This document shows positions 11,201 to 48,996 of a stretch of 64,000 nt of DNA, in pieces. The notes beneath the pieces were generated by a model. The model saw nothing but the letters and a program-made list of their open reading frames with translations. It was not told the DNA's origin and made no database searches. A program made the position numbers and the translations under genes. Positions within the stretch are counted from its first letter, which is position 1. Each line of letters opens with the position of its first letter. Location of the stretch: the IMG/VR virus record IMGVR_UViG_3300021057_000274, positions 186,001 to 250,000 of that record. One strand, given 5' to 3'.

Positions 11201-14200
11201 TCGCGGCCAGGTGGGACCCTCGCCCTTGAGTGACCGCCGTCCATGACGAGGTACCGAGCTGGTGCGGCATGAATATCTCGTTAGACGTGCCGTCACCTAG
11301 CTCGCCGATGGATGAGGTCCCCCACGTGAAGAGCTTTCCGTCTGAGCGGATCGCTGATCTTGTCGTAGCACCTCCGCCGAGCGCGGTCCACGAGGAAGAT
11401 CCCACCTGCATCGGCGACGAGATTCCAGCCGTGGGGTGATAGTTTAACCCGAGCTCGCCGATCGAGTCAACTCCCCAGGTAAAGAGCTTTCCGTCTGAGC
11501 GGATCGCGACGCCGTGGCTCGCCCCCGCCGCGACCGCTGTCCATGAGGAAGAGCTGATCAAGACAGGAGATGAGTAGTTTAGACCTCCTGACGTGGTGTG
11601 CTGTAGCGTCACCGGGATCCCGAGCTGTCCCACCGTGTTGTTGCCCCAGCCGAAGAGCTTGCCGTCGAAACGAATCCCGATCGTCGAGCTGAGCCCGTGC
11701 GCGATCGCGACCCATGACTCGTTGCCAATCTGTGTCGGCGCCGACTCGCGCTTCAGAGAGTTGTTGCCGAGCTGACCCGCGCCGCCGTCACCCCACATGA
11801 AGAGCTTGTCGTCGCCGCTGATCGCCGAGAAGTGCGACATTCCGCCGACTCCCAGCTTCTTGAAGCTGAGATCAGACGCCACCTGGGTCGGTGAGGCCTT
11901 GACCTGAGAGAACGACATGTTGATGAAGCCCCAGGTGAAGAGCTTCTTGTCCGAGCGAATACCTGCCCCCTCGGTCAACCCAGCGGAGATCTCACGCCAC
12001 GTCAAGGTGGGTACTAGCACTGGAGACGACCTGGAGCTTGGAGCTCGACCGTCACCGATCGAGCCAGCCAGATTGGATCCCCAATTGAAGAGCCTGCCGT
12101 TCAGGTCGAGGCCTGACGAGTTGTCAGAGCTCGCGTGGCCGATCACGGACCAGCGCGAGAGGCCGACCTGGACGGGGCTTGAGTAACTAACGATGTCATC
12201 AAGACCAAGGCGTCCGCTCGCGCCGTTGCCCCACGCGAAGAGCAGACCGTCGCTCCTGATCGCCTTCGTCTGCGCGTTCCCTCTCGAGATCGCCGTCCAC
12301 GACGACGTGCCGACCTGTACCGGGGAGGAGCGGCTCGTCGTCGTTCCGTCACCGAGCTGGCCCAAGGAGTTGAGCCCCCAGGTAAAGAGGGCTCCGTCCT
12401 CTCTCAGGGCGCCGCTGTAGGAAGCTCCGCCCGCGACGGCGATCCATGAGGAGGTACCGACTTGCACGGGGCTAGAGCGGTTCGCCCCAGCGTCACCGAG
12501 CTGCCCAGACGAGTTCGATCCCCAGGTAAAGAGACCGCCGTCTGACCGAATTCCCAAGACGTGGTTGTTACCGCCGTCAACCACGATCCAAGAGGAGGTG
12601 CCGACCTGAACGGGTGACGAGCGCTCACCGGTCGTACCGTCGCCGAACTGTCCGTTGGCTCCGTCGCCCCAGCTGAAGAGCCCACCGTCCGCGCGAATCG
12701 CGACGGAGTAGTTAGCTCCGCACCCAGCGGTGATCGCGACCCAAGATGAGGTGCCGATCTGTACGGGTGAGGAGCTGTTTGAGATCGAGCTATTTCCTAG
12801 CTCGCCAGACGCGCCGCGCCCCCACGCGAAGAGCCTACCGTCGGAGCGAATCGCGAGCACGTGCTGTGACGCTGAGATCGCTGACCAGGTAGAAGTGCCG
12901 ATCTGCACGGGAGATGAGCGGTCGATCGTCGTGCCATCTCCGACCGCCCCGTTTGCGTTGTGGCCCCAGCCGAAGAGAGATCCGTCGGAACGGATCGCGA
13001 CGGTGAAGCTGTGACCTGACGCGACCTGGCTCCAACTCTTATAGCCGATCTGGACCGGCGACGAAGCTAACGAGGTCGCGATGCCGAACAAGTTGAAGGC
13101 GGATCCGTCTGACGCTGACCCCCACATGTACAGCTTGCCGTCCTTGATACCGCCAGTTGACTGATTTCCTGAGCTGACGGTCGCCCAAGACGAGAGTCCG
13201 ATCTGGATCGGTGATGATCGCGAGCTGATCTCACCGTCACCCAACCGGCCGTTCGTGTTGATCCCCCACGCGAAGAGCTTGCCGTCGACGTCGATCGCGT
13301 GCGAGGTGAGGGATCCAGCGTGAACCACCGCCCATGAGCTAGCTCCGATCGAGACTGGAGATGACCGAGCGGTGGTAGAGTCGTCACCGAGCTGCCCGCT
13401 TCCATTATTGCCCCACGCGAAGAGCTTGCCGTCGAGGCGAATCGCGAGGGTGTGATCGTCGGTTCCAGCGCTGACCCCGACCCAGCTAGAGGTGCCGATC
13501 TGTACCGGGGAAGACAGGTCAGGAGCAGCGGTACCGTTACCCAAGCGTCCGTTAGCTGCTGCACCCCAGGTAAACAGTCCGCCGTCAGAACGAATCGCGA
13601 CGCCGTGAGATCCAGCCAACGAGATCGCGGTCCACGACGACGTGCCGATCTGTACTGGCGATGATCGATTGGTGACGGATCCGTCACCAAGCTTTCCTGC
13701 GGTGTTCTCGCCCCAAGTAAAGAGGGAGCCGTCGGAGCGGATCGCGGCAGTCTGAAAGTTTCTAGCTGCGATCGCGATCCAGCTCGAAGTTCCGACCTGC
13801 GTTGGGCTAGAGATCGAGGTGGTGTTGCCAAGGCCGAGTTGCCCCTCGGTCCCTCGCCCCCACACGAAGAGAGCGCCGTCCTTTCGCAGAGCGGCCGAGT
13901 GCAAGCCACCGCAGGCGATCGCGGTCCAGCTTGACGCGCCGATCTGGAGGGGGCTCGAGAGCGACGCGGTGTCGTTGGAGCCCAAGCGCCCTTGCCCGCC
14001 GTTGCCCCACGCGAAGAGTCCCCCGTCGGAGCGCAGAGCGAGGGTGTGCGCCGAACCGAACGCTAGCGCGACCCAGCTTAGAGGATCATGTTGGCCGATC
14101 TGAACGGGTGACGAGCGATCATTGAGCAGGCCGTCACCGAGCTGCCCTGAGGAATTTCCTCCCCAAGCGTACAGGGATCCCTCTGAGTCGATGACGACCG

Positions 14201-24807: not shown

Positions 24808-25236
24808 TCAGTCTTCCGTGATCGTCGACGACGAGGTCAGGATCGGGGTCACTCCGTTCGCCACCGAGATGTTCGGTGTCACGGTCCCCTTATAGAGCAC
24901 CTTGCCTGCGCCTGAGGACAACGTGCCGACCGCCCAGTGAGTGATCGTCGCGGCGCCGCCCGTGCACTGCGGAAAGTTGATGTTCGCGACAGGGGAGACG
25001 CTGTTCGAGGTTACCACCCATCCGCCCGTGGTGCGTGCGACCGCGACCCGAGCGTACGAGGTGTACGACGTCTCGTTGGTCGTCTGTGAGCCACCCTCAC
25101 CGACATCCGCGGTGTGCAGACTGACGTGGAGGTTGGTGAGCGGCGATGACGCCGCGTTGTCCGCAATGTTCGCGATCGCGGTAGCGTTGAAGATGAGCCT
25201 CAACAGATCGTTTTCGAAGGTATCGCCCTTAGAAAT
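24808..25236 (-). CDS. Small phage tail/fibre-associated structural protein; probable ATT start
   Basis: SKGDTFENDLL..IFN..LHVSLHTAD.GE..NETSYTSYARVAVAR..FPQCTGG..ITH family pattern; GGAGGT 5 nt before ATT at 25236. Confidence 0.75.
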   Translation of the reverse strand: MSKGDTFENDLLRLIFNATAIANIADNAASSPLTNLHVSLHTADVGEGGSQTTNETSYTSYARVAVARTTGGWVVTSNSVSPVANINFPQCTGGAATITHWAVGTLSSGAGKVLYKGTVTPNISVANGVTPILTSSSTITED

Positions 25237-25250
25237 GATACACCTCCACA

Positions 25251-25304
25251 TAAATAATTGATCAAGTTACATTGCTTGATCAACTTGGATTCAACCTCTA
25301 TTTA
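25251..25304. promoter_or_regulatory. Opposed pair of late promoters (+ 25251-25256, - 25299-25304) with a 9-bp inverted repeat between them
   Basis: cataaata...ttgatcaag-N8-cttgatcaa...tatttatg. Confidence 0.6.
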
Positions 25305-26071
25305 TGTCATGTCAATACTTCGGATTTGTTTACCTATGGCGGGACCGAAAGCGTAAACGTTATTACATTGGCTCTCATAGAGGCCGAATCGATGACGGCT
25401 ATATCTCTTCATCGATTTGGATGCGTAGAACTTATCATCGACGTCCAGAAGATTTCAAGCGTCGAATTTTGGTTTATTGCTTTGAAGAGAGCAAGAAAGC
25501 TCTTCATGCTCTAGAACAAGTCTGGCTTGATAAGATCAAGAACGATGAGCTTGGAAAACGCTATTTCAACCTCAAGAAAGCTGCAAGAGGTGGGCAAACT
25601 GACTCTTCAGAAAATATCTCGCGTAAGCAAAAGCTCTCTTGGACTCCAGAAAGAAAAGCCAAGTGGGTCGCTAAGATGGCAGAGTGGCGTGATCGTGACC
25701 CTACCGCTAAGGCAAAGCTCGCGACCATGGTCGGGCGTACCCACTCAATATCAGTGTTAGAAAAGATCGGAGCTGGCAATAAAGGTAAGATCATGTCGAA
25801 CGAAGTGAAGGCCATCATGTCAGAAAAGGCTCAAGCTAGAGCTCACTTAACCGCAGAACGAAATAAACAGCTACATGCTGCTGGCAAGATCGGAATGAGA
25901 GGACGTCAACACTCGGCTGAGACCAAGGCCAAGATGTCTGAAGCAAACCGACTCAGGTGGGCAGCGAAGCGAACTCAAAAAGGCGCCAGGAAGATTAAAC
26001 CGATAACTCTAGACAGCTTGAAAGGCATGATCTCGGCGATCGCCGAAGCTAGAGCTACTGCTCAGCCCTGA
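25304..26071 (+). CDS. GIY-YIG homing endonuclease (Seg-like) with NUMOD3 repeats, antisense to the tail operon
   Basis: GFVYLWRDRKRKRYYIGSH..DGYISSS; HSAETKAKMSEA; lower GC than the flanks. Confidence 0.85.
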   Translation: MSCQYFGFVYLWRDRKRKRYYIGSHRGRIDDGYISSSIWMRRTYHRRPEDFKRRILVYCFEESKKALHALEQVWLDKIKNDELGKRYFNLKKAARGGQTDSSENISRKQKLSWTPERKAKWVAKMAEWRDRDPTAKAKLATMVGRTHSISVLEKIGAGNKGKIMSNEVKAIMSEKAQARAHLTAERNKQLHAAGKIGMRGRQHSAETKAKMSEANRLRWAAKRTQKGARKIKPITLDSLKGMISAIAEARATAQP

Positions 26072-30573: not shown

Positions 30574-31496
30574 GCGTTAACCTTTTGAGAGTAGGGAGCT
30601 TTGACCGGTCGATTGAAAGCGTCCAACGCGATCGGTAGAATATTTAGCCTCACCACTAGACAATTATTTGTTTGGATTCCAACGGCTTGGTGACCGAACT
30701 TGTCGAAGAGGAGGCCGGTGAAGAGAGCGACGCCTCCAGACGTCTTTCGCTTGATGTTATTCAAGGGAGCTGGGAGATCAACGTCGCGCGTGATGATGTC
30801 CGAGGCGAGATGCGGCGCGCGTGTCGGGTCATTGACGTCGAGACCGTAGAAGTCATAGACCCGAACGCGCGAGTCGGTGGTCGTGCTGGCATCTCCCTCA
30901 TTGACGACGGGCGTCTGGAAGAGGATCTTCGGGTTCTTGAACTTCGAGTCGACGTTGTTGACTAACACCGGCTGCCCGTCGATCCGATAGGCGAGCGCGA
31001 GAGGCTTTCCGGTCGCGTCATACGTCTGGTCAAAGCGAATCTCGAGGGGCAGCCGATCGGCAGGAAGCGTGGTCGGCGGCTCATAGTTGACCCACTCCGT
31101 CTTCGCCGACGAGAGCTGGTTCAACGCGTTCTTCGAGATGTCAAAGAGAGCCCGCGTCGTCGTGTAAGCGTCCGGAGCCGTCGCGGCGAAGATCGCGTTG
31201 AGCTCCGCTAGCGAGAGCAACTTGAACGAGGGAAGCAACCTGAAGACGCGATGGGTCTGGTTGTACGGAGCTCCGCGCCCCTCGTCGAGAAAGATCCCGA
31301 TCGTCACCCACTTGCCACCCATCGTCCAACTCTTCGCGCCGCGCTCTGGCGCCGCCGAGATGACCGCGGTACAGAAGAAGTCATCTCGGTTGTCTGGCTC
31401 GTACCAGTTGAAGTGTGACGGCACGACCAGGTCCTCTCCGTCGATCGAGTAGAGGTCATAGAACGCGTTTGTCGGGTCGTTGAACGGGACGCTCAC
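30570..31496 (-). CDS. Hypothetical (probably virion) protein
   Basis: 308-aa coupled ORF in a late operon. Confidence 0.65.
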   Translation of the reverse strand: MSVPFNDPTNAFYDLYSIDGEDLVVPSHFNWYEPDNRDDFFCTAVISAAPERGAKSWTMGGKWVTIGIFLDEGRGAPYNQTHRVFRLLPSFKLLSLAELNAIFAATAPDAYTTTRALFDISKNALNQLSSAKTEWVNYEPPTTLPADRLPLEIRFDQTYDATGKPLALAYRIDGQPVLVNNVDSKFKNPKILFQTPVVNEGDASTTTDSRVRVYDFYGLDVNDPTRAPHLASDIITRDVDLPAPLNNIKRKTSGGVALFTGLLFDKFGHQAVGIQTNNCLVVRLNILPIALDAFNRPVKAPYSQKVNA

Positions 31497-32269
31497 TCTT
31501 CCTCACCCTTCTTTGACGGCTTCTTCTTGACATCTTGCTCGTCCTCAACCGGCTCCTCGGGCTCATCGGACTCCTCTTCCTTCGGCTCCTCCTTCTTGGG
31601 TTTGGCGACGACCTCCTTGAGCTTCGCCTGGACCATCTCGGCGATGACGTCGTCGTACTCCCCGAAAACCTGCTTGAAGACCTTCTTGAGCTCGGTCTTC
31701 GTCTCCGCTTGCAAGATGCGGTTGCGCACCTCTGTGCCAGACAGTCCGCTCTCACCCATCGGCACGATCGTATAGTAGCCTCCCTCCTTCGCGAGGGAGA
31801 GATCCTCGAGCTTGAAGTCCTTCGGAAGCTTGGAGAAGAAGTCCGACTTCTCGTAGCGCTCGGCGTCCTTTTTGCCGACGGCCGAGAGGTAGACGAGGTC
31901 ATACCCCTTGTATTGCTGGAAGATCTCCTTCGGACTGAAGGCCGGGTTCTTGCACTCGACGACGCGCCGCGGGCGAACGCCGTAGAGGGTGACGATCAGC
32001 TCTTGCTTCTCGATGAAGCTGAACGGCGAGACCTTGCCCTCCTCGGCCTTGAAGTTGGTCTTGTTCGAGGTGGCGATCCACACGTTCTGCTTGCCGAACT
32101 TCCGGCAGAGCCAGCGATAGGCGTGGTAGTGGCCGAGGTGAAAGGGTTGGAAGCGTCCGCCGTAAACGACCACCAGCTTGCGGGTGTTCTTCTCGTCAGC
32201 CTCTGGAATCTCAGGCTCCTCGTCATCGATCGGCTTGGCGGTGATGTCCTTGAGTTCAGTGAGCTTCAT
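31493..32269 (-). CDS. HIGH-superfamily cytidylyltransferase-like protein with acidic tail
   Basis: VVVYGGRFQPFHLGH, PFSFIEK, VGKKDAER, SGTEVRNRI. Confidence 0.8.
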   Translation of the reverse strand: MKLTELKDITAKPIDDEEPEIPEADEKNTRKLVVVYGGRFQPFHLGHYHAYRWLCRKFGKQNVWIATSNKTNFKAEEGKVSPFSFIEKQELIVTLYGVRPRRVVECKNPAFSPKEIFQQYKGYDLVYLSAVGKKDAERYEKSDFFSKLPKDFKLEDLSLAKEGGYYTIVPMGESGLSGTEVRNRILQAETKTELKKVFKQVFGEYDDVIAEMVQAKLKEVVAKPKKEEPKEEESDEPEEPVEDEQDVKKKPSKKGEEE

Positions 32270-32283
32270 TCGTTTCCCGGGGT

Positions 32284-32305
32284 TAAATATGCTTGCTTCT
32301 ATTTA
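32284..32305. promoter_or_regulatory. Opposed late promoters (+ TAAATA 32284-32289; - 32300-32305)
   Basis: ttaaata-tgcttgcttc-tatttac at a divergent gene junction. Confidence 0.55.
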
Positions 32306-32516: not shown

Positions 32517-33182
32517 ATGGCGAACCATTACCCTCGCGGTAAAAGAGCAAAAAACGACACAAAACCCGAGACGACGGCGAAGTACTACCTCACCAACGCC
32601 AAGCTTCTCCCAGCGGTGATTCGCGCCAAGACGATCGGGAAGATGACCGACGAGCTAGCCGAGATGCTCCTCATGCTGACGCGCAAATACGCGCAGCGCC
32701 CCTGCTTCAACGGTTACACCTACAAGGACGACATGATCTCAGAGGCGATCACGAACCTCTGTCTGAACGCCTTGAAGTTCAACTCTGACAAGTACGACAA
32801 TCCGTTCGCTTACTACACCACCTGCATCAACAGCTCCTTCCTTCAGTTCTTGAACGTAGAGAAGAAGCACCGGCGCATCCGCGACATGCTCCTGATCGAC
32901 GTCGGCGAGAACCCGAGCTTTAACTTCACCGTCGACAGCCACAAGCAAGAGGGCGGAGAGTTCACTGGCGAGCTCCGTGAACTGAAGCAACAGATCGAGG
33001 AGGCGAAGGTTCGGACCGTCGAAGAGGCTGCGCTAGCCGTCAAGATCGCCGAGGAGAAGCGCGTCCAAGCGATCAAGGATCGAGAAGAGGCTCTCAAGAT
33101 GAGCGAGTCAGAAACGGTCCGTGATCTCGAGTACGTTGAGCCGGAGCTGCAAGAAGCCGCGCTTCTTACGTACGACGAATGA
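32517..33182 (+). CDS. gp55: Late transcription sigma factor
   Basis: YYLTNAKLL..FNGYTYKDDMISEA..KFN..K..NPFAYYT..INSSFLQFLNVEKK; directly upstream of gp47/gp46. Confidence 0.9.
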   Translation: MANHYPRGKRAKNDTKPETTAKYYLTNAKLLPAVIRAKTIGKMTDELAEMLLMLTRKYAQRPCFNGYTYKDDMISEAITNLCLNALKFNSDKYDNPFAYYTTCINSSFLQFLNVEKKHRRIRDMLLIDVGENPSFNFTVDSHKQEGGEFTGELRELKQQIEEAKVRTVEEAALAVKIAEEKRVQAIKDREEALKMSESETVRDLEYVEPELQEAALLTYDE

Positions 33183-38456: not shown

Positions 38457-38464
38457 TATAAATA
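38457..38464 (+). promoter_or_regulatory. Late promoter TATAAATA (exact T4 consensus), leaderless
   Basis: 4 nt before the GTG at 38469. Confidence 0.75.
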
Positions 38465-38468
38465 GAGA

Positions 38469-39125
38469 GTGGGTGGAATCTATAAGATATGCAACATCAA
38501 AGACGGCACCGTTTATATCGGTAGCGCGAAGGATTTTGTAGATCGTGAGGGAAGGCATTTCTACAATCTCACGCATAATTGTCATGTCAATCCCCACTTG
38601 CAGAGAGCGTACACTAGAGACGGCCGAGAATCATTCAAATTTTTGATCGTTGAGGTGATCGAGCCTTACGATAAGCTCACTTACTTCGCCAGGGAAAATC
38701 ATTTCATTGAGCTACACAAAACTAATGGTAAAGTTTATAACATAGCAAAAGCTGAGGGCGGGTGGACGCATCATACCTATCTTCGAAAGCGCGAGATAGG
38801 TAAGAAGATAAGCGTAGCTAGGCGAAAAACATTGTGCGCCATGTCAGCCGAAGATCGTAGGAAGAAATACGGGCATAGGCGAGGTACAAAATTAACTGAA
38901 GAAGAGAAGATAAATGTAAGCAAGAAGCTCAAAGGGGTCGTGAGATCTCCAGAAACTCGAGAAAAGATGCGCCTTGCAAAATTGGGTAAACCTTCTAAAT
39001 TGAAGGGAGTCCCCAAGAGTGAAGAGACGAAGCGAAAAATGAGTATAGCCCAGTTGGGCCACCCAGTCTCCGATGAGGCCAAGGCTAAAATGAGAGCCGC
39101 CAAATTACGGCGAAGGACCCTTTAA
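38469..39125 (+). CDS. GIY-YIG homing endonuclease with NUMOD3 repeats
   Basis: GIYKICN..VYIGSA..R..H..H.NPHLQRAY; SPETREKMR and SEETKRKMS; AT-rich relative to the flanks. Confidence 0.9.
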   Translation: MGGIYKICNIKDGTVYIGSAKDFVDREGRHFYNLTHNCHVNPHLQRAYTRDGRESFKFLIVEVIEPYDKLTYFARENHFIELHKTNGKVYNIAKAEGGWTHHTYLRKREIGKKISVARRKTLCAMSAEDRRKKYGHRRGTKLTEEEKINVSKKLKGVVRSPETREKMRLAKLGKPSKLKGVPKSEETKRKMSIAQLGHPVSDEAKAKMRAAKLRRRTL

Positions 39126-41659: not shown

Positions 41660-42051
41660 TGGCCCGCGGGGTCAAGGCGGGATCCGTTCGGGGTCCCTAT
41701 CGCAAGACGACGCAGAAGATCGAGCGGTTTCGGGTCGAGCTCAATCGGGCGCTGATCCTGGCGATCGACAATGACCGATCTCTGCCCGCGGAGAAGTTTT
41801 ACACCGGTAGAGAGATCCGCCAGCGATTCGGCCTGTCAGCTCTCGTCGAGTTCCGAGAGTGGTTTAGCTCTGAGCAGAGCTTCGACAATGACAGGGCTGA
41901 TCAGATCCTCCAAGCGTTTCGCTCGGGTAAGATCAACCAACGGACCTACACCTCTAGAATCAATCGCTGCTTCAAGTGGCGCTGGCGTCTCAAGCTCGGG
42001 CGAGTGATCGACGCGAGGTCGATCGTCAGGCCGGCGGTGCTCGAGTTTTAA
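41659..42051 (+). CDS. Basic hypothetical protein
   Basis: TAGTG-coupled start at 41659. Confidence 0.55.
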   Translation: MARGVKAGSVRGPYRKTTQKIERFRVELNRALILAIDNDRSLPAEKFYTGREIRQRFGLSALVEFREWFSSEQSFDNDRADQILQAFRSGKINQRTYTSRINRCFKWRWRLKLGRVIDARSIVRPAVLEF

Positions 42052-42142
42052 GTCAGGCTAAACCTGTACTAAATTGTAACATCATATAGTATAGATAGTA
42101 AGAAGAAGCAACTGAGGTGTCAAATTAAATGCACACCTCTAG

Positions 42143-42247
42143 ACGACGGGCGCTAGCCCGTCCGCCGCGCCAGCGGCGAAAGATAGGAAAGTTACCGATT
42201 AGAAGCTGCGCCGGGAGAGACCCGGCGGACGGGCTAGCGCCCGTCGT
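42143..42247. repeat. 25-bp perfect inverted repeats flanking a 55-nt spacer (nested hairpins)
   Basis: acgacgggcgctagcccgtccgccg (42143-42167) is the exact reverse complement of 42223-42247. Confidence 0.95.
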
Positions 42248-42484
42248 TCACACGAAGGGGTGTCCGCCCTTCTTCATCAAGTCTCCCGCTTCCTTCATCC
42301 GCTTGTTCAAGAAGTCGACCGCTCGATCACGCTCAGCTGGAGTGAGCGCCCACACGTCATCCCTCGTCATCGCCCCTCGAAACCAGTAGAGGATCTGGTT
42401 GAGTTGTTCGATGAGAGCTTCATTGTCACGGGTGAACGAGTTGATCACGGTCTGGATCAGCTCTCCGTTGTTGGTACCGATCAC
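42248..42484 (-). CDS. Baseplate hub assembly protein, gp51-like
   Basis: LYWFRGAMTRDDVWALTPAERD..FLNKR; directly follows the gp26-like gene. Confidence 0.6.
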   Translation of the reverse strand: MIGTNNGELIQTVINSFTRDNEALIEQLNQILYWFRGAMTRDDVWALTPAERDRAVDFLNKRMKEAGDLMKKGGHPFV

Positions 42485-43296
42485 CCGGAGAAAAAATTTA
42501 TCGGATTCAAGTCGAGATCATAGTCAAAGATCGCGTTGCAATCTTTACAGGTCAATTTCTGCTTGAAGTCGATCCCCCAGTCAGACGCTTCGTTCGCACG
42601 TTTGACGATCATGTCGATGCTGGTCTTTTGAAGCGCCGCGAGCCACTCGTAGATGAAACCAGACTCGGTCACTCTCTGGCCGTCATCCTCTACCGCTGCG
42701 ATCACCGTTAGCAAGTCATTTAAGACCATCTTCTCTAGCATCTGGCGCGGGACGATCTCTCCGCGCATCTCGATCTTCAGAATGTCCTGTCTAAAATTGA
42801 TCTGAGCGATTGTCTCAGAGAACTTAACAGGACGTAGAGTGACGATCTGGCCGTTCTCGAGCGGACACGTGAAGAGGAGATCACGCTTGTCGAGCAGCTC
42901 AGTTCGCATGTTCGAGATCATCTGTGCGAGGCTGACGTTGTAAGTGTGCTCCTTAGCGTTAGCACAGTTGTGCTTAGCAGCGACGGTCTTCACGTCGCCG
43001 TAGGTAGAGGACATGAGAAAGCAGAAGATCGCGTCGACATCCTTGGAGAGGAGATCGTCTGGCTTGAGGATCTCGGGGATGCACTCTTGGCAAACCTCCT
43101 CTAGAACCTTCGCGCTGATCAACAAGTCGGCTGACTTGAGCTTCATCTCGGCGAGCGCTGACATGGGCTTGACCTGGATCTCACCCTGCTTGGCGCTGGG
43201 AGCTAGCACACCAGGGTCGTAAAAGAGAGCCTTCGACGGAAGCTGGAAGACCTTCCCAGGGAGCTTGACCTTCGCGAGAAGGGGATTGTTTGACAT
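42481..43296 (-). CDS. gp26: Baseplate hub subunit/assembly chaperone, gp26-like
   Basis: LPSKALFY, VKPMSA..E, DVDAIF..STYG, CKDC, NFF C-terminus. Confidence 0.75.
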   Translation of the reverse strand: MSNNPLLAKVKLPGKVFQLPSKALFYDPGVLAPSAKQGEIQVKPMSALAEMKLKSADLLISAKVLEEVCQECIPEILKPDDLLSKDVDAIFCFLMSSTYGDVKTVAAKHNCANAKEHTYNVSLAQMISNMRTELLDKRDLLFTCPLENGQIVTLRPVKFSETIAQINFRQDILKIEMRGEIVPRQMLEKMVLNDLLTVIAAVEDDGQRVTESGFIYEWLAALQKTSIDMIVKRANEASDWGIDFKQKLTCKDCNAIFDYDLDLNPINFFSG

Positions 43297-43315
43297 GCGA
43301 GTTACCTCTGGTATG

Positions 43316-43684
43316 TTATGGCTTCTTATTTATCAAGCCTGGAGTGGGTTTCTGGCGAACATTTTTTACCTCTGGCTTGTTAAACATCCCGGTCTTAGTG
43401 AGCTGCATGTTGCGAAAGGGCGGAGGCACGACCGCCCAGAGCGGGCACTTAGCAACGAGCGACGGGGTGACGATCGGGTCAAGCCCTTGCTCGATCCGCT
43501 GCAGGTTGACCTGGATGAGCCACTTGATGAAGATCTCCTTTAGATTGTGCGGAGTCGTCGGGAGGGCGTTGAGATCAAGAAACAAGCCAGAGGTGTTGAG
43601 GAGAATTCCCTTGAGCTTGGTGTAATGCTCCTCGATCTCCTTGACGTCTACCGACTCGGTCATCTTTTTAAGGAGATCAGGCAT
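43316..43684 (-). CDS. Hypothetical protein
   Basis: Start revised to ATG 43684, just downstream of the minus-strand late promoter. Confidence 0.6.
   Translation of the reverse strand: MPDLLKKMTESVDVKEIEEHYTKLKGILLNTSGLFLDLNALPTTPHNLKEIFIKWLIQVNLQRIEQGLDPIVTPSLVAKCPLWAVVPPPFRNMQLTKTGMFNKPEVKNVRQKPTPGLINKKP
43327..43332 (-). promoter_or_regulatory. Late promoter (TAAATA)
   Basis: gATAAATAa upstream of gp26. Confidence 0.55.
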
Positions 43685-43685
43685 G

Positions 43686-43698
43686 TAAATAGTATTTA
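43686..43698. promoter_or_regulatory. Palindromic bidirectional late promoter TAAATA-G-TATTTA
   Basis: Lies between CAT (43682-43684) and ATG (43698-43700) of divergent genes. Confidence 0.75.
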
Positions 43699-46600
43699 TG
43701 TCCAGAGAAAACACCGCTCAGTCGATCTTAGACCGCAACCGCATGCTTGACTCAGCGGCGAAGGAGATGCGCCACGCGTCCAAGATGTTCACGAAGATCG
43801 GTGAGCATCTCTCTAACGCAAATCTTGATAAGCTAGCTGTCAACGTGAAGGAGCAGCTCAAGCGTCTCGACCTCGTCGACGAGAAGATGCTCAAGGAGAT
43901 CGGCAACTCTGCGAAAGATCTTGCGATTCTCCTCGACAAGCTTGAGGATCAAGCCTCATCGGCAGCTCAGCGCCAGAAGGACATCGCGCATGAGATGGCC
44001 GATCTCTGGAAGAAGTCTAGACAAGGGGCTACCTGGAGGAAAGATCATCCTCTCCAGCAATCCGCCGAAATTCGAGATGAGAAGGCCCGCTACTTGAAGC
44101 TAGGCCGTGAGGCTGAGTTGCTCAAGGCCCACAAGGCGAAGATGGATCAGCTTCGCGAGGAGGTTTTAGCTGGTAAGGAGTTCGGAGGGGTACTGAACAC
44201 GGCTACTAAGGGGCTAAGCGATCTCACTAAGTCAGTCAAGGGCACGATCGTGGCGTTTGCGTCGATTCACATGGCCTTGAATCTCTTGAAGAGAGCCGCG
44301 ACGACGATCTACACTGAACTCACTGATCTGTCTCAGAAGGGCCTGTTAGGAGCTTCTGGCACCTTTCAAAAGCATGGCTTTGGGCTGTCGTTGAGCGCCA
44401 AGGAGCAAGGTCAGATCATCGATCAAAATCGTAACCTGATCTTGATGCTGGGTGGTGGTGTAAACGCGATCGACCTTTTTCTTGATGACATTCGTGACTC
44501 TCGGAAGGAGCTCGAGTTCTTAGGCACTGCGTCGGCCGCGGCGACGGCCAGGTTCTCGAAGCTCACTCAAGAGTTCGGCTTCGAGCGACGCGACGACTCA
44601 CCCCAGGAGACCATCGAGCGCAACAAGAAGATGCGCAAGGGGTTCATGGAACAGTACAAGGTGTTCGCCGGGGCGTTCGGTGACTCAGCTGACCAATTCG
44701 CTACGATGTACGAGACGCTGCTTAACGAGGAGAGCATCCGTACTCGTTTGAATGTTCTTGGGCGAAGAGAGGCAGAGCTCTACACCCAAGAGCTGATGAC
44801 TCGCACGCAAAACTTGCGGATGATGGGCTTATCGAATCAGCAGATCAGCGAGTTCAACAAGAAGCTCAGCGACATGTTCGATCCGAAGAAGAACACCCTC
44901 GTCGAGAGAACGAAGGCTGGCGCGGACATGCTCTCGGTGGTGAACATCATCAGACCGATGCTAGAGCAATTTGGATTGGCCGATCTCGCGCTAGAGCTGG
45001 AAGAAACTCTCCCGGCGCTGAACGAGTACATTCGCACGGCGATGGATCCGGGGGCGACGGAAGAGGACATTCAGAAGCTAGAGGCGACGGACAGAGTGGC
45101 TTACGCTCAAGCTGCGTTCCAAAAGGCCGTCAGCGCGCTTCAACGAGAATCATCTGGCAGGGCAAGAATTCCGATTCAGGGGATCACCCAGAACGGAGCT
45201 AGTCCGCTCTTCTCTCACACGATGGAGCGAGGCCAGGTGCTCAGCACAAAGATAGCTACTGGTGAGTACATCCCAGAAGCCGATCGTGCCAGACGGGCCG
45301 CTGAAGCCAAAGCTCTAGCCGAGGGCAAGAAGCTTCCCGGCAGTGGAACCTTTAAGCTGAGTGACTTCGTACCTCCAGAGTTCAAGCAAGGACTACTCGA
45401 CGCCGGGAAGTCTATTGAAGCGTGGGCAAACACGTGGACGAAGAAGTTCGGTGTAGACTTGACTGGATCGACGGAGACTGTCATCAGCTGGTTTGGTCAG
45501 CTGGGCGATAGCTTGCTAGAGACGATCGGAGTCACTAACGATCTGGGTAAGAACTACGGTGACCTCTCTGACATCGTCGGCAAGGTCAGGTCGATTCTAA
45601 GCGAAAATTGGCTTACCTTATTTGTCGGTGCGGTCGTGGCAGGCACGGCGGCGCTAGGACTGTTTGCCTTCCAAGTAGCTCGTGCAACCGCAGCTCTACA
45701 AAACCTCGGAGGACCGAGCCTTCCCGGAGGAACGCCTAGCGGTGGTACTCCGGACAAGCCGACTGGTAAGGGATCCGGGCATCGGTCCAACCGGCCGGGC
45801 GGGGGAGGTCCTCGAGCACCTGGACGAGTGCCCATGCCGACGGGAGCGGGTGCTGCGAGTGCAGCAGGTGTGGCTGCCCGGGGATTCCTTGGAGTCGCAA
45901 CGGGGCCGGTAGGTTTGGCTCTAACCGCATTGAGTGCAGCCGACGTAGCCACGGGCGGAGCTATCACCGGAGCAGCTGCTACTGGAGTCACTAATGCTAT
46001 GATGTATGGCCGTGATCGAGAGGTCGCTGACATGCTCGCTGGAAAACCCGGACGAGGCGCGGCGCCGCAGTCATTTCAAGCTGCTCCAAACGCTGACGTT
46101 AGCGGATTGCACCCGAGCGTCCAGTCTAGATTTCGAGCGATGGCTGACGAGTACTACCAGATGACTGGCAACCAAATCAAAGTCACCAGCGCGAGGAGAA
46201 CTACCCAACAGCAGATCAAGCTCTACCAGGACTACATCGACGGAAGGAGCAAGCTCCCCGCGGCAAAGCCTGGAACATCCCTCCACGAGCGCGGCTTAGC
46301 GCTCGACATCGACGCGAAGCAAGCGCAAGATCTACATCTATCAGGCTTGCTCCAGAAGCACGGATTTACCTGGCCGATGCCCCAGAGAGATCCGGTTCAC
46401 ATCCAGACGCAGGGCGCCCAAGGCATGGGTGATCCAGTTGAGCAAAACATCGTCGCACCAGATAAAAAGGTGCTCGAGGAGCTGAAGCGCCAGACCTTCA
46501 TCATCGATCGTGACACCTATGGCGCTCGGGCCGTCGAAGAGCTCAAGCGGATCTCGGCGACGATCGTCGACAAGAGCGGAGCTCAAGATTACTTCCTCGA

Positions 46601-47213
46601 GAAGCTCAACAGCACCAGCTTCATTCCGCCTCAGTCGATGAAGCGCCACGGGACGATGCTGAGCGGCGCGTCGCCATCATCAGATCACCACGGCGAGTTC
46701 CCGCCTCAAGTAAAGTCAGACGGCGGCGGCGCTCCGCCCGCGCTGAGCGGCCTCAAGCCCCTCATGGGCACGCTCGAGAAGGTCGGCTCGTCGGACGCGT
46801 TCCGCAACATGATGGGTGGCATCGCCGAGAAGTTCATGCCACACCTCCAAGGCGCGGTTCCTGCCGTCGATGAGTTGAAGGCGAGCGCGTCGCACCTCGC
46901 GAAGCGGTTTACCCCGGTCGACGCCGCGAGCGCGTCCTCCTCACCTCCGCCGTCAACCGCCAACATCGAGAAGGCGCTGCGCAACTTGACATCGGGACGT
47001 GACCCGCTGAAGCTGTCGTTGCCTGACGGCTCTCCCGACGCGGCCGCCTCTAGCTCAGACCCTCACCTAGATGCTGAGAAGGCGAGCCTCCAGGAGCTCC
47101 GCCAGCAGACCAAGCTTCTGTCAGGCGTGATCAATGCGCTGAGCAAGAGCGACACGGCGCCCTCAAGTGACCCGTTCAAGCCCTCGACCATAAAGCTCCT
47201 CGGGGTGGAATAA
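43698..47213 (+). CDS. Tape-measure/baseplate hub (gp29-like) protein with M15 (VanY-like) peptidoglycan peptidase domain
   Basis: Long helical N-terminus, hydrophobic segment, Gly/Pro linker, then VTSARRT..Q..LY..AAKPGTSLHERGLALDI..DPVHIQ. Confidence 0.75.
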   Translation: MSRENTAQSILDRNRMLDSAAKEMRHASKMFTKIGEHLSNANLDKLAVNVKEQLKRLDLVDEKMLKEIGNSAKDLAILLDKLEDQASSAAQRQKDIAHEMADLWKKSRQGATWRKDHPLQQSAEIRDEKARYLKLGREAELLKAHKAKMDQLREEVLAGKEFGGVLNTATKGLSDLTKSVKGTIVAFASIHMALNLLKRAATTIYTELTDLSQKGLLGASGTFQKHGFGLSLSAKEQGQIIDQNRNLILMLGGGVNAIDLFLDDIRDSRKELEFLGTASAAATARFSKLTQEFGFERRDDSPQETIERNKKMRKGFMEQYKVFAGAFGDSADQFATMYETLLNEESIRTRLNVLGRREAELYTQELMTRTQNLRMMGLSNQQISEFNKKLSDMFDPKKNTLVERTKAGADMLSVVNIIRPMLEQFGLADLALELEETLPALNEYIRTAMDPGATEEDIQKLEATDRVAYAQAAFQKAVSALQRESSGRARIPIQGITQNGASPLFSHTMERGQVLSTKIATGEYIPEADRARRAAEAKALAEGKKLPGSGTFKLSDFVPPEFKQGLLDAGKSIEAWANTWTKKFGVDLTGSTETVISWFGQLGDSLLETIGVTNDLGKNYGDLSDIVGKVRSILSENWLTLFVGAVVAGTAALGLFAFQVARATAALQNLGGPSLPGGTPSGGTPDKPTGKGSGHRSNRPGGGGPRAPGRVPMPTGAGAASAAGVAARGFLGVATGPVGLALTALSAADVATGGAITGAAATGVTNAMMYGRDREVADMLAGKPGRGAAPQSFQAAPNADVSGLHPSVQSRFRAMADEYYQMTGNQIKVTSARRTTQQQIKLYQDYIDGRSKLPAAKPGTSLHERGLALDIDAKQAQDLHLSGLLQKHGFTWPMPQRDPVHIQTQGAQGMGDPVEQNIVAPDKKVLEELKRQTFIIDRDTYGARAVEELKRISATIVDKSGAQDYFLEKLNSTSFIPPQSMKRHGTMLSGASPSSDHHGEFPPQVKSDGGGAPPALSGLKPLMGTLEKVGSSDAFRNMMGGIAEKFMPHLQGAVPAVDELKASASHLAKRFTPVDAASASSSPPPSTANIEKALRNLTSGRDPLKLSLPDGSPDAAASSSDPHLDAEKASLQELRQQTKLLSGVINALSKSDTAPSSDPFKPSTIKLLGVE

Positions 47214-47238: not shown

Positions 47239-47248
47239 GGAGAGGTGA

Positions 47249-47254
47249 TAAATA
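47249..47254 (+). promoter_or_regulatory. Late promoter (TAAATA)
   Basis: gATAAATAc upstream of the portal gene, inside a gaggt/acctc inverted repeat. Confidence 0.7.
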
Positions 47255-47277: not shown

Positions 47278-48996
47278 ATGCCAGGCATTTTCACGGACTA
47301 CTGGCGGATCGTAAAACCCGCCCCCGCTAAGACCCAGTACACGGCTTCCAGCCCGGAAGTTGCCAAGCTCTACAGCAACTTCTCGTGGTACACGAAGATC
47401 ATGAAGGGGGCGGCGTCCAGGTTCGCCAAGTACGCCCAGTACAAGAACATGGACAACGACGTGTTCGTCTCCCGGGCGCTTGACACGATCGCCGAGGAGA
47501 TGACGCAGCCGAGCGCCAGAACCAAGCTTCCATTCGAGATCGCCTACCAGAACGAGAGCGACGGGGACGTGCCTGACGCGGTCTCGACTACGATTCGCGC
47601 CGCGCTCCGCCACTGGGTCGACGTCCAGGACTTGAACACTCTCCTCTTTGACATCGCCCGCACGGCGATCAAGTACGGTGATTGCTTCTTCCGGAAGGCC
47701 TCTGACCTAAAGAAGTGGCAGTACGTCGATCCGAACGACGTGATCGGCATCTCGGTCGACAAGGACGGCAAGCCGGAGCACTACCACGTTCGTCACCAGG
47801 ACGTCTCTCGCCCGATGGGCGGCACGACGGTCGGTGAGGTCGCGATCATCCCGGCCGCTGGCATCGTCCACTTCACCCGCGCGAGCTCGATGGACGACAA
47901 CGGGCCGTTCGGCGAATCGGTCCTCCAGCCGTGCGTCCGCGCCTTCCGCCACCTCTCGCTCCTCGAGGACTCGGTCATCATCTACCGCATCGTCCGCGCG
48001 CCTGAGCGCCGTGTTTTCTTCCTCGACGTCGGTCACATGCCGCCGCAGCGGGTCAAGGCCTTCCTCGAGGCGGTCAAGACCGAGATGAAGCAGAAACGCA
48101 TCCCGAACGAGACCGGCGGCACGGACAAGATCGACTCGGTGTTCAACCCGATGTCGATGACCGAAGATTACTTCTTTGCTCAGACGGCCGACGGCCGCGG
48201 CTCAAAGGTCGAGACGCTCTCTGGCGGCGAGAACCTAGGCGAGATCGCTGACCTGAACTACTTCCAGAACAAGTTTCTTCAGGGCCTTAGGATCCCGTCA
48301 AGCTACATGAGGGGCGGCAACGACGGCGGGATCGCGATCGCCGACGGCAAGGTCGGCATCGCCTACATCGAGGAGGTTCGCTTCGCCAATTACGTGGGGC
48401 GGTTGCAGTCGAAGATAAACGATACCTTCGACCAACACTTCAAAGCGTACCTCAAGTCAGCTGGCATCAACATTGATCACCACCTGTTCAAGTTGAGACT
48501 CGTCGATCCGCAGAACTTCTTGAACTACCGAGACGCTGAGGTAGCCGACAAGATGATCTCGAACTACAACGCGATCAAGGACATCAAGGTCCTCTCCGAG
48601 CAGTTCAAGCTCGAGCGCTACCTCAGCCTGACTGAGGACGAGATCCAGGAGAACGAGATTCTGCTCAAGAAGGAGCGCTGCATCCCCGAGGAGGGTCTAG
48701 GTCCGCGCCTGACCGCTCACCGCATGATGTATGACCCGCAGTGGCAAGAGAACCTTCCGGACATCAAGGTCCCGGAGAGCTTTGAGGACCACACCAAGAC
48801 CGAGGAGGGTGGGGGTGGGGAGGAGGGCGAGGAGCTCAACACCGACGAGATGAGCGCTCCTGGTGAGGAGGGCGAAGAGGGGAAGGACGCGCCTGAGGGT
48901 GAGGAGGGTGGCGGTGAGGAAGAGACGGGCGGCGACGAGCCGGCCACAGAGACCGAGGAAGACACCGGTGGCGAGGCTCCCCCTAAGGAGAAGTGA
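47278..48996 (+). CDS. gp20: Portal protein
   Basis: LLEDSVIIYRIVRAPERRVFFLDVGHMPP, SMTEDYFF, GRGSKVETLSGGENLGEIADL, LRIPSSY, EEVRFA. Confidence 0.95.
   Translation: MPGIFTDYWRIVKPAPAKTQYTASSPEVAKLYSNFSWYTKIMKGAASRFAKYAQYKNMDNDVFVSRALDTIAEEMTQPSARTKLPFEIAYQNESDGDVPDAVSTTIRAALRHWVDVQDLNTLLFDIARTAIKYGDCFFRKASDLKKWQYVDPNDVIGISVDKDGKPEHYHVRHQDVSRPMGGTTVGEVAIIPAAGIVHFTRASSMDDNGPFGESVLQPCVRAFRHLSLLEDSVIIYRIVRAPERRVFFLDVGHMPPQRVKAFLEAVKTEMKQKRIPNETGGTDKIDSVFNPMSMTEDYFFAQTADGRGSKVETLSGGENLGEIADLNYFQNKFLQGLRIPSSYMRGGNDGGIAIADGKVGIAYIEEVRFANYVGRLQSKINDTFDQHFKAYLKSAGINIDHHLFKLRLVDPQNFLNYRDAEVADKMISNYNAIKDIKVLSEQFKLERYLSLTEDEIQENEILLKKERCIPEEGLGPRLTAHRMMYDPQWQENLPDIKVPESFEDHTKTEEGGGGEEGEELNTDEMSAPGEEGEEGKDAPEGEEGGGEEETGGDEPATETEEDTGGEAPPKEK

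What the first reader, a model, noticed from the sequence alone, without database searches (positions are those of the whole stretch)
43682..43700. 13-bp palindromic bidirectional late promoter serving two leaderless genes
Seen: CAT-G-TAAATA-G-TATTTA-TG. The start codons of two divergent genes are only 13 bp apart. That space is a perfect palindrome of the late-promoter core, with no room for an SD. Established: T4 late promoters consist only of a -10 TATAAATA, with the start site a few nt downstream. Inference: both transcripts start at or near their AUG, and the two orientations compete for polymerase.
Basis: partly seen in the sequence, partly recalled or inferred. Interest (0 to 1): 0.6.

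Follow-up and report, generated by a model that had tools for sequence, protein, structure and literature searches.

The report
Back-to-back late promoters, probably leaderless genes
Two diverging genes of a giant T4-related soil phage start only 13 bases apart, and the gap is filled by two inverted copies of the phage's late-promoter core, so both messages probably begin at or within 3 bases of their start codons, a layout this phage uses at about two dozen other genes.

Summary
CAT (43682-43684), G, TAAATA (43686-43691), G, TATTTA (43693-43698), TG. The start codons are 13 bp apart.

Both genes are real, and relatives support both start codons. TAAATA is the core of this phage's T4-type late promoter:
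- A gp55 late-sigma homolog lies in the window.
- The hexamer precedes portal, hub, sheath, protease and wedge genes.
- There is no -35 conservation.

Nine related phages or contigs keep an inverted TAAATA/TATTTA pair at the same junction. The gap between hexamers varies from 1 to 35 bp, or the order is swapped. They are therefore two independent promoters, not an operator. The window holds the most compact version.

T4 geometry puts the box at -13 to -6, so the plus-strand start falls on or 1 nt before the AUG. The minus-strand start falls 0-3 nt before its AUG.

Genome-wide, 27 of 99 TAAATA sites are followed by ATG at 4-6 nt, against about 1.4 per spacing otherwise. These sites have no Shine-Dalgarno sequence and favour C at -1. 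They include wedge and endolysin genes. Xanthomonas phage XacN1 shows the same enrichment; T4 does not.

No transcription start data exist, so leaderless initiation and promoter competition remain inferences. I rate this a new variant of a known kind.

The parts
43686..43691 (+). Plus-strand late-promoter core TAAATA (GTAAATAG in context), 6 nt upstream of the ATG of the 1171-aa gene.
   Evidence: It matches the proximal-class consensus: a non-A base before the hexamer, G after it, and N4-6 to the ATG.
43693..43699 (-). Minus-strand late-promoter box ATAAATA. It overlaps the AT of the plus gene's ATG and lies 8 nt upstream of the ATG of the 122-aa gene.
   Evidence: ATAAATA is the enriched 7-mer of this genome: 42 copies against at most 15 for same-composition permutations.
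43686..43698 (.). The 13-bp palindrome TAAATA-G-TATTTA. This is the DNA that either open complex would have to melt.
   Evidence: That the bubble is shared is an inference from T4 promoter geometry.
43698..47213 (+). Gene for a 1171-aa virion-type protein with a VanY/M15 peptidoglycan peptidase domain (residues 804-882). Probable tail or hub protein carrying a cell-wall hydrolase.
   Evidence: Homologs P0003-P0005. The N-terminus aligns from residue 1 with six relatives. The identical protein is called in public data.
43316..43684 (-). Gene for a conserved 122-aa protein of unknown function, sitting between the hub gene and the large gene.
   Evidence: 36 cluster-representative homologs. Syntenic copies are 40-45% identical and share the same N-terminus. 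AlphaFold2 pLDDT is 78.7 with no fold match.
43327..43333 (-). ATAAATA late promoter of the hub gene, 30 nt upstream of its ATG. It lies inside the last codons (Ile118-Asn119-Lys120) of the 122-aa gene.
   Evidence: A box in the same position precedes the hub gene in relatives. I-N-K is invariant in the alignment.
42481..43296 (-). T4 gp26-like baseplate hub gene.
   Evidence: Pfam T4_baseplate and phrog_150.
47248..47254 (+). ATAAATA late promoter of the portal gene, followed by a 23-nt stretch carrying a Shine-Dalgarno sequence. This is an example of the leadered class.
   Evidence: The portal gene at 47278-48996 matches Portal_T4.
32517..33182 (+). Homolog of the T4 gp55 late sigma factor, the likely reader of the TAAATA boxes.
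   Evidence: T4 gp55 search, E 5.3e-7. phrog_234, E 4.8e-27.
25250..25305 (.). A second bidirectional pair, CATAAATA...TATTTATG, with 42 bp between the hexamers. Each gene's start codon is embedded in the other gene's promoter box, and each box lies 47 nt upstream of its own gene's ATG.
32284..32305 (.). A third bidirectional pair, TAAATA-N10-TATTTA, upstream of the gp55 region.

Best explanation
The 13-bp palindrome is the most compact form of a conserved bidirectional late promoter. It consists of two independent gp55-type -10 boxes with core TAAATA, one on each strand, separated by a single base pair. The phage's gp55 homolog, bound to host RNA polymerase core, reads either box. With the plus-strand box (GTAAATA, last A at -6), transcription starts on the A of the AUG at 43698 or one base before it, giving a leaderless mRNA for the 1171-aa peptidoglycan-hydrolase virion protein. 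With the minus-strand box (ATAAATA), it starts at about 43687/43686, or possibly at the A of the AUG at 43684, giving a message with a 0-3 nt leader for the conserved 122-aa protein. Neither message can carry a Shine-Dalgarno sequence, so translation would have to begin by recognition of a 5'-terminal AUG. Both open complexes must melt the same roughly 13 bp, so only one orientation can be occupied at a time and the two genes share one initiation site. Shown: the sequence, the reality of both genes and both start codons, the identity and conservation of the promoter motif, and the genome-wide recurrence of the box-abuts-ATG layout. Inferred: the exact start sites, leaderless translation and mutual exclusion.
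For: Both starts are supported by homolog N-termini and by identical public gene calls.

Evidence that TAAATA is the late-promoter core:
- A gp55 homolog lies in the window.
- ATAAATA occurs 42 times against at most 15 for permutations.
- TAAATA-core boxes (ATAAATA at most, TTAAATA at the protease gene) precede portal, hub, sheath, prohead protease, wedge and fibre genes.
- There is no -35 conservation.
- The same ATAAATA box is predicted for the related jumbo phages CBB and GAP32 (PMC5259590).

Footprint at this junction: L006, L007/L008, L009, L010, L011, L012, RsoM2USA, XacN1 and Xoo-sp13 all keep an inverted pair at the homologous divergent junction. Gaps are 35, 20, 12, 12 and 20 bp, or the order is swapped, while flanking sequence is not conserved.

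Geometry: the T4 box spans -13 to -6.

Genome-wide class:
- ATG follows TAAATA at N4/5/6 in 6/16/5 cases, against about 1.4 per other spacing.
- 24 of these open ORFs of at least 40 aa.
- C at -1 occurs in 16/24 against 74/245 other ATG starts, p=5e-4.
- 9 of 10 of these starts equal public gene calls.
- The class includes baseplate wedge, endolysin and transglycosylase genes; a tail-sheath stabiliser gene has the same layout with a GTG start.
- XacN1 has 20 N4-6 sites against 4-5 controls, and 5 of 6 checked are annotated CDS starts.

There are nine hexamer pairs within 80 bp genome-wide, against about 0.5 expected per orientation.
Against: - There is no direct 5'-end evidence. The only RNA data set holding this DNA has three short contigs, none at the junction.
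- The minus-strand spacing is N8, outside the N4-6 mode; only 4 sites genome-wide have N8.
- The plus-strand box has G rather than A before the hexamer.
- In six contigs of related phages these two genes have predicted leaders of about 13-50 nt (hexamer-to-ATG spacing 18-57 nt), so leaderless expression is not ancestral for them.
- A sigma-70-like match at 43290-43317(+) could give a long-leader transcript, although one such match is the number expected by chance.
- gp33 was not found, and the sliding clamp is only a positional candidate.
- The host is unknown, so its capacity for leaderless translation is unknown.
Confidence: 0.65

Rival explanations
1. Only one box is an active promoter, most likely the full ATAAATA on the minus strand. 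The large plus-strand gene would then be expressed from a distant upstream promoter, for example the sigma-70-like site at 43290-43317, as a long-leader RNA antisense to the small gene. Translation would start without a Shine-Dalgarno sequence, helped by the AU-rich UAUUU just before the AUG.
For: The plus-strand box is GTAAATA, a weaker match to the leadered consensus. There is a 10-of-12 sigma-70-like match with a TG extension at 43290-43317(+). The homing-endonuclease-like gene at 25304 has the same TATTTATG context yet lies 47 nt downstream of its own box with no Shine-Dalgarno sequence.
Against: G or C before the hexamer is the commonest state in the 24 box-abuts-ATG genes (8 G and 8 C of 24), and G after the hexamer occurs in 14 of 24; this site has both. 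The plus-strand hexamer is conserved at this junction in all relatives. The sigma-70-like hit equals chance expectation, 1 found against 1.2 expected. There is no other plus-strand TAAATA between 38459 and 43686.
Confidence: 0.15
2. TAAATA next to start codons acts at the RNA level rather than as a promoter. It would be an AU-rich, protein-S1-type translation enhancer replacing the Shine-Dalgarno sequence inside longer transcripts. The palindrome would then be two such elements back to back.
For: The hexamer occupies the position where a Shine-Dalgarno sequence would sit. In relatives the complement of the opposite promoter (UAUUUA) lies 2-13 nt before the AUG of each gene.
Against: The same hexamer also sits 17-59 nt upstream of genes that carry their own Shine-Dalgarno sequence, which fits a promoter and not a ribosome site. 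The spacing peak at N5 equals the T4 distance from -6 to +1. The C(-1)/A(+1) preference is a start-site signature. At this site there is no same-strand upstream gene to supply a longer transcript.
Confidence: 0.1
3. The palindrome is an operator for a dimeric DNA-binding regulator, possibly the adjacent 122-aa protein, which would control both genes.
For: It has perfect dyad symmetry around a central base pair, lies between divergent genes, and sits next to a small gene of unknown function.
Against: The half-site spacing varies across relatives (1, 12, 12, 20, 20 and 35 bp) and the order is inverted in four of them, which is incompatible with a fixed dimer site. The half-site is the genome-wide promoter hexamer. 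The 122-aa protein has no DNA-binding family or fold match.
Confidence: 0.03
4. It is a chance AT-rich palindrome with no function.
For: It is short, and intergenic DNA tends to be AT-rich.
Against: The expected count is 0.08 in a window of 50-63% GC. The pair is conserved at the junction in nine relatives. Pairs are enriched genome-wide.
Confidence: 0.02

Closest known systems
Bacteriophage T4 late promoters (gp55/gp33/gp45-dependent TATAAATA boxes), including the divergent pair at the T4 inh|segE junction
   Same: Both are a -10-only box with core TAAATA, have no -35 element, are read by a gp55-family factor, precede virion genes and occur in either orientation (PMC2988020). T4 itself has an inverted pair, TATAAATA-tagata-TATTTATT, between the divergent inh and segE genes, with 6 bp between the hexamers.
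   Different: At that T4 junction (the one T4 pair examined), both predicted leaders are about 22 nt and carry Shine-Dalgarno sequences. T4 shows no excess of boxes 3-7 nt before an ATG: 3 against 4 controls, and 12 against 15. Here the gap is 1 bp and no leader is possible. The base before the hexamer is free rather than A. gp33 was not detected.
Predicted ATAAATA late promoters of the jumbo myoviruses vB_PcaM_CBB and GAP32
   Same: They belong to the same broad phage group, have the same 7-mer upstream of structural genes, encode a gp55-like factor and have no detectable gp33 or gp45 (PMC5259590).
   Different: They are described only as a motif upstream of structural genes. The library I searched holds no report of boxes abutting start codons, leaderless messages or palindromic pairs. 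The XacN1 and RsoM2USA genome papers do not mention promoters at all.
Leaderless middle and late mRNAs of Thermus phage phiYS40, and -10 boxes adjacent to ORFs in Deinococcus-Thermus
   Same: A -10-type element lies a few bp upstream of the ORF, so the transcript begins at the AUG. Much of a large phage's late programme uses it (PMC3594737; PMC12340547).
   Different: Those promoters are read by the host primary sigma in a phylum where leaderless translation is the norm. Here the box is of the T4 gp55 type. The nearest cultured relatives infect Ralstonia and Xanthomonas. Only about 5-7% of genes use the layout, alongside ordinary Shine-Dalgarno-led late genes.
Lambda PRM/PR region (leaderless cI message from a promoter divergent from PR)
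   Same: Closely spaced divergent promoters, one of which gives a leaderless mRNA (PMC10491246, listed; the PRM/PR arrangement is from my own knowledge).
   Different: The lambda promoters are sigma-70 promoters about 80 bp apart and are controlled by operators. Only one message is leaderless. They do not share a -10 region.

Membership tests
T4-type (gp55-dependent) late promoter | A -10-region box TATAAATA (core TAAATA) at about -13 to -6 | tested here: met
   The core TAAATA is present on both strands. The minus strand has 7 of 8 matches to the T4 box (CATAAATA) and the plus strand 6 of 8 (TGTAAATA). The 7-mer ATAAATA is enriched genome-wide.
T4-type (gp55-dependent) late promoter | No conserved -35 element | tested here: met
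   Information content is below 0.45 bit at every position from -40 to -1 relative to the hexamer in 24 aligned sites.
T4-type (gp55-dependent) late promoter | The phage encodes a gp55-family late sigma factor | tested here: met
   Window 32517-33182. T4 gp55 search gives E 5.3e-7 and phrog_234 gives E 4.8e-27.
T4-type (gp55-dependent) late promoter | A co-activator gp33 and a sliding clamp gp45 encoded by the phage | tested here: inconclusive
   Clamp-loader subunits were found (phrog_168 and phrog_225). An adjacent 224-aa ORF is only a positional clamp candidate. phrog_223 found nothing, but its controls were also silent. There is no credible gp33 hit.
T4-type (gp55-dependent) late promoter | Location upstream of late (virion and lysis) genes | tested here: met
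   Portal, hub, sheath, prohead protease, wedge, fibre, endolysin and sheath stabiliser genes.
T4-type (gp55-dependent) late promoter | Transcription starts about 6 nt after the last A of the box, late in infection and dependent on gp55 | not testable with these tools
   Only assembled metatranscriptome contigs were available, and none covers the junction.
Leaderless mRNA | The primary 5' end is at the start codon, or within a few nt of it | not testable with these tools
   This is predicted from geometry only. There are no 5'-end data.
Leaderless mRNA | No Shine-Dalgarno sequence, and an AUG rather than GUG or UUG start | tested here: met
   Both genes start with ATG, and the 13-bp spacer has no purine-rich run.
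Leaderless mRNA | A -10 element a fixed few bp upstream of start codons, recurring across the genome | tested here: met
   27 of 99 hexamers have an ATG at N4-6, against about 1.4 per other spacing. C(-1) is enriched, p=5e-4. The minus-strand gene here has N8, off the mode.
Bidirectional (divergent, overlapping) promoter | Two promoter elements on opposite strands between divergent genes, conserved as a pair | tested here: met
   The pair is conserved in nine relatives. There are nine pairs in this genome, against about 0.5 expected per orientation.
Bidirectional (divergent, overlapping) promoter | Mutual interference between the two promoters | not testable with these tools
   This is inferred from both open complexes needing to melt 43686-43698.

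The most novel reading that the evidence does not exclude
A lineage of T4-related jumbo phages, comprising this soil phage and to a lesser degree Xanthomonas phage XacN1, has moved a substantial part of its late programme onto leaderless mRNAs started by gp55-type promoters that abut the AUG. That part is about 24-34 genes here and includes wedge, sheath-stabiliser and endolysin genes. The 13-bp palindrome would be the limiting case: a single shared transcription bubble read in either direction, where the direction of each initiation event could be set by which way the activating sliding clamp faces.
Probability: 0.3. Interest if true: 0.7.

Novelty: new variant of a known kind. Interest (0 to 1): 0.5.

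Why it matters
T4-type late transcription is a textbook system, but it has been described with leadered, Shine-Dalgarno-dependent messages. If gp55-type promoters in this clade routinely start transcripts on the AUG, late genes of these jumbo phages would depend on leaderless translation in hosts whose nearest known counterparts are proteobacteria. That would bear on how such phages bias the ribosome pool late in infection. It also affects gene-start calling in jumbo phage genomes, because a TAAATA 4-6 nt upstream would be a usable start signal. The 13-bp palindrome offers a minimal natural substrate for asking how a -10-only, clamp-activated polymerase chooses direction when two promoters share one bubble. 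XacN1 is cultured and shows the same layout, so the question can be tested directly.

Tried and rejected
- DNA similarity search of the locus against phage records found no match. A search for the 122-aa protein in phage records also found none.
- The search for related loci with the hub protein in viral contigs found no relative.
- The word-based protein search for the 122-aa protein returned only itself. The exhaustive search was needed to find relatives.
- PHROG and Pfam gave nothing for the 122-aa protein. The AlphaFold2 model (pLDDT 78.7) had no significant match in the PDB or BFVD. The best were weak 'DNA end protector' rows at E of about 1, which I did not accept.
- RNA evidence: one soil metatranscriptome holds three short identical contigs at 42045-42248, 44026-44171 and 44506-44671.
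- I tested whether the TAA of the hexamer is simply the stop codon of an upstream gene. This is rejected: it ends a frame open for 77 or more codons at only 6 of the roughly 36 proximal sites.
- I tested whether the box-abuts-ATG genes are one paralogous family copied with its promoter. This is rejected: only one paralog pair was found.
- I tested whether 5' ends of the proximal class are less structured than other gene starts. There was no difference (p=0.97 and 0.48), so this is not informative.
- The gp45 family search was uninformative because its controls were silent. Plain tblastn was too insensitive; it missed even gp55.
- The operator hypothesis is rejected because of variable half-site spacing.
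- I found no published transcription analysis for XacN1 or RsoM2USA. The phiYS40 primary paper is not held, so I cite a review instead.
Full report
**The observation.** The window reads ggCATgTAAATAgTATTTATGtcc at 43680-43703.
- CAT at 43682-43684 is the start codon of a minus-strand ORF.
- ATG at 43698-43700 starts a 1171-aa plus-strand ORF.
- 13 bp separate the two start codons.
- The palindrome TAAATA-G-TATTTA occupies 43686-43698, one base to the right of the spacer, so its last A is the A of the plus-strand ATG.
- The exact 13-mer is unique in the window. Shuffles predict 0.08 matches even with two mismatches allowed.

**The genome.** The window is bases 186001-250000 of a single 389,331-bp contig with 57.8% GC.
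- It is held as a virus record that is 98% complete.
- It is present, identical, in two soil metagenome runs that are probably its source.
- It is a T4-related jumbo myovirus. The window holds a gp26-type baseplate hub gene (42481-43296, minus strand) and a gp20-type portal gene (47278-48996).
- Sheath, prohead protease, wedge and fibre genes are also present.
- The nearest named phages by hub protein are Ralstonia phage RsoM2USA (38% identity), Xanthomonas phages XacN1 and Xoo-sp13, and the 121Q/PBECO4 group.

**Both genes and both start codons are real.**
- The 122-aa minus-strand protein matches no PHROG or Pfam family.
- It has 36 cluster-representative homologs of 67-1741 aa, most of them 94-149 aa, 21 of them at E of 1e-10 or better.
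- In metagenomic relatives it sits in the same place, between the hub gene and the large gene. Those copies are 40-45% identical and share the N-terminus. The in-frame GTG at 43714 is therefore not needed.
- The 1171-aa protein has a VanY/M15 peptidase domain at residues 804-882.
- Its relatives are 918-1003 aa, and some carry an SLT domain instead.
- The N-termini of six relatives align from residue 1.
- Public gene calls use exactly these two starts.

**What the hexamer is.**
- A gp55 late-sigma homolog lies at window 32517-33182.
- ATAAATA occurs 42 times in the genome, against at most 15 for any permutation of the same bases.
- TAAATA occurs 99 times. At least 59 of these sit in a promoter-like position upstream of an ORF.
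- With a gap of 17-59 nt to the ATG that holds a Shine-Dalgarno sequence, TAAATA-core boxes (ATAAATA at most, TTAAATA at the protease gene) precede the portal, hub, sheath, prohead protease, wedge and fibre genes.
- Nothing is conserved upstream of the hexamer, so there is no -35 element.
- This is the T4 late-promoter pattern: an 8-bp TATA box about one helical turn upstream of the start site with no -35 element (PMC2988020).
- The same ATAAATA motif was predicted for structural genes of the jumbo phages CBB and GAP32 (PMC5259590).

**Comparative footprint at this junction.** With the large gene oriented on the plus strand, the spacer between the small gene and the large gene holds an inverted TAAATA/TATTTA pair in every relative I could read.

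| Source | Arrangement |
|---|---|
| L006 | 35 bp between hexamers |
| L007/L008 | 20 bp |
| L009 | 12 bp |
| L010 | 12 bp |
| L011 | 20 bp |
| L012 | the two boxes swap order |
| Window | 1 bp |

RsoM2USA, XacN1 and Xoo-sp13 lack the small gene but keep a swapped-order pair between the large gene and the hub gene. The surrounding sequence is not conserved and the spacing is free. The two hexamers are therefore independent functional elements, one per direction, and not halves of a fixed-spacing protein site.

In the six metagenomic relatives each box lies 18-57 nt from its ATG. The window therefore holds the extreme compaction of an ancestral, leadered, bidirectional late promoter. One further relative, the contig of P0003, has a 17-bp spacer, but its DNA could not be fetched.

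**Geometry.** In T4 the box spans -13 to -6, so the start site is the sixth base after the last A.
- Plus strand: the last A is 43691, so +1 falls on 43697 (T) and the A of the ATG is at +2. With the usual purine preference, the message begins AUG or UAUG.
- Minus strand: the last A of the box is 43693, so +1 falls on 43687. Purines lie at 43686 (a 2-nt leader) and at 43684, the A of the ATG, which is preceded by C.

It is exact for the large gene and within 0-3 nt for the small one.

**The site is one instance of a genome-wide layout.** This is the main new result.
- Of the 99 TAAATA sites, ATG follows at spacings of 4, 5 and 6 nt in 6, 16 and 5 cases. The mean for the other spacings from 0 to 40 is about 1.4. 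Control hexamers show no such peak.
- 24 of these ATGs open ORFs of at least 40 aa. Counting GTG starts and spacings of 7-8 nt gives about 34.
- The base before the ATG is C in 16 of 24, against 74 of 245 other ATG starts (Fisher p=5e-4). This is the pyrimidine(-1)/purine(+1) signature of a start site.
- The base before the hexamer is A in only 4 of 24, against 18 of 35 in the leadered class (p=0.013).
- The TAA inside the hexamer is rarely an upstream gene's stop codon.
- The genes are not paralogs.
- 9 of 10 of these starts equal independent public gene calls.
- The class includes a 1163-aa baseplate wedge protein, an endolysin, a transglycosylase, and a DnaB-type helicase. A tail-sheath stabiliser gene has the same layout with a GTG start.
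- XacN1 has 20 sites at N4-6, against 4 for the reversed-pattern control and 5 at N10-12. Five of six checked sites are annotated CDS starts.
- T4 and Xoo-sp13 show no excess, and RsoM2USA shows at most a weak one.

**Mechanism.** The gp55-type holoenzyme binds either box.
- Both open complexes would melt the same bases, 43686-43698, using opposite template strands. Occupancy is therefore mutually exclusive, and each initiation event serves one gene. This is an inference.
- The predicted starts are about 10-14 bp apart and point away from each other, so the two RNAs do not overlap. In relatives with gaps above 12 bp, the 5' ends would overlap as antisense.
- Neither message can hold a Shine-Dalgarno sequence, so translation must use a 5'-terminal or near-terminal AUG. 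This is also an inference.
- The two sides are not equivalent. The minus-strand box is the full ATAAATA but sits at the off-mode spacing N8. The plus-strand box is GTAAATAG at N6, typical of the proximal class.

**Rival explanations.**
- One-sided promoter plus a distant promoter. A sigma-70-like match lies at 43290-43317(+), but one match is what chance predicts.
- An RNA-level AU-rich translation enhancer. This is disfavoured by the dual use of the hexamer at long and short distances, by the N5 peak and by the C(-1) bias.
- A dimer operator. This is rejected by the variable spacing, and the 122-aa protein shows no DNA-binding family or fold.
- Chance. This is rejected.

**What is known, and what is new.**
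- T4 itself has a close inverted pair at the inh|segE junction, with 6 bp between the hexamers, but with leaders of about 22 nt that carry Shine-Dalgarno sequences. A tight bidirectional late promoter is therefore not new in kind.
- Leaderless late programmes are known for Thermus phage phiYS40 (PMC3594737).
- Boxes of the -10 type abutting ORFs are known in Deinococcus-Thermus (PMC12340547).
- I found no report of gp55-type promoters that abut start codons. The XacN1 and RsoM2USA genome papers do not discuss promoters.
- I therefore class this as a new variant of a known kind.

**Limits.**
- There are no transcription start data. The RNA run holds three short contigs: two inside the large gene and one near 42.1 kb. 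That shows at most that the DNA or RNA of this phage is in that library.
- The host is unknown.
- gp33 was not found, and the clamp is only a candidate.
- My genome-wide gene calls are a simple codon-usage caller. The spacing histogram does not depend on them.

Noticed in passing
window 43327-43333 (minus strand): The hub gene's late-promoter box ATAAATA is written in the codons Ile118-Asn119-Lys120 (ATA AAT AAG) at the C-terminus of the 122-aa protein. The I-N-K motif is invariant in the three-way alignment, and relatives carry a box in the same place. The conserved protein tail may reflect a promoter constraint, that is, dual coding.
   Followed up: partly
window 25250-25305: A symmetric bidirectional pair, CATAAATA...(42 bp between the hexamers)...TATTTATG. 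Each gene's start codon is embedded in the other gene's promoter box. The shared region of about 30 nt between the predicted starts holds an inverted repeat (TTGATCAAG / CTTGATCAA). The flanking genes are a head-protein-like gene (24808-25251, minus) and a homing-endonuclease-like gene (25304-26071, plus). Neither has a Shine-Dalgarno sequence. L006 has a similar central hairpin between its two boxes.
   Followed up: partly
window 32284-32305 and 32517-33182: The gp55 late-sigma homolog lies just downstream of a third inverted pair, TAAATA-N10-TATTTA. The minus-strand box serves a cytidyltransferase-like gene (31493-32269). The plus-strand box is followed after 28 nt by the ATG (32318) of an open frame that precedes the gp55 homolog in a different frame.
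   Followed up: partly
whole genome (G000), e.g. 25120(-), 86799(+), 298627(+), 365889(+); window 58570(+): Fourteen genes begin with an MKLSEL-like N-terminus (M-[KL]-[LI]-x-[ED]-[LI]), and 8 of them are box-abuts-ATG genes. They are not detectable paralogs. This may be a constraint on the first codons of leaderless messages.
   Followed up: partly
whole genome (G000): The base before the hexamer differs between classes. It is A in 18 of 35 leadered sites but in only 4 of 24 ATG-proximal sites (p=0.013). This hints at two promoter sub-classes or strengths.
   Followed up: partly
window 38457-39125: The only perfect T4 consensus TATAAATA in the window lies 4 nt before a GTG that opens a 218-aa ORF. 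Its N-terminus looks like a GIY-YIG homing endonuclease, judged by eye only and not scanned.
   Followed up: no
L007 8052-10985: In a metagenomic relative the portal gene is 977 aa and carries an intein with an HNH endonuclease (Pfam Intein_splicing and HNH_3 between two Portal_T4 halves).
   Followed up: no
window 43698-47213 compared with L009 and L010: The large protein carries a VanY/M15 peptidase module here, but an SLT lytic transglycosylase module in closer relatives. This looks like a swap of the cell-wall hydrolase domain within one structural protein.
   Followed up: no
window 5205-14222 (minus strand); G000 173738-182305 (minus strand): Two giant ORFs of 3005 aa and 2855 aa lie in the structural region. 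The 2855-aa gene has GTAAATA 8 nt before its ATG, the same off-mode spacing as the 122-aa gene.
   Followed up: no
whole record: The record is labelled 'provirus' (389,331 bp, 98% complete), while the public contig carrying the same proteins is 395,730 bp. The content I examined looks like a lytic T4-type jumbo phage, so the label may result from end trimming.
   Followed up: no
window 43290-43317 (plus strand): There is a sigma-70-like match, TTGACA-16-TATGTT with a TG extension, antisense at the 3' end of the 122-aa gene and overlapping the start of the hub gene, pointing toward the large gene. One match is the number expected by chance.
   Followed up: partly
G000 315176-317896 (L014 2677-5397): Clamp-loader genes (gp44-like and gp62-like) are followed by a 224-aa ORF (phrog_11058, unknown function, no Pfam match). 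This ORF is a positional candidate for the sliding clamp that T4-type late transcription needs.
   Followed up: partly
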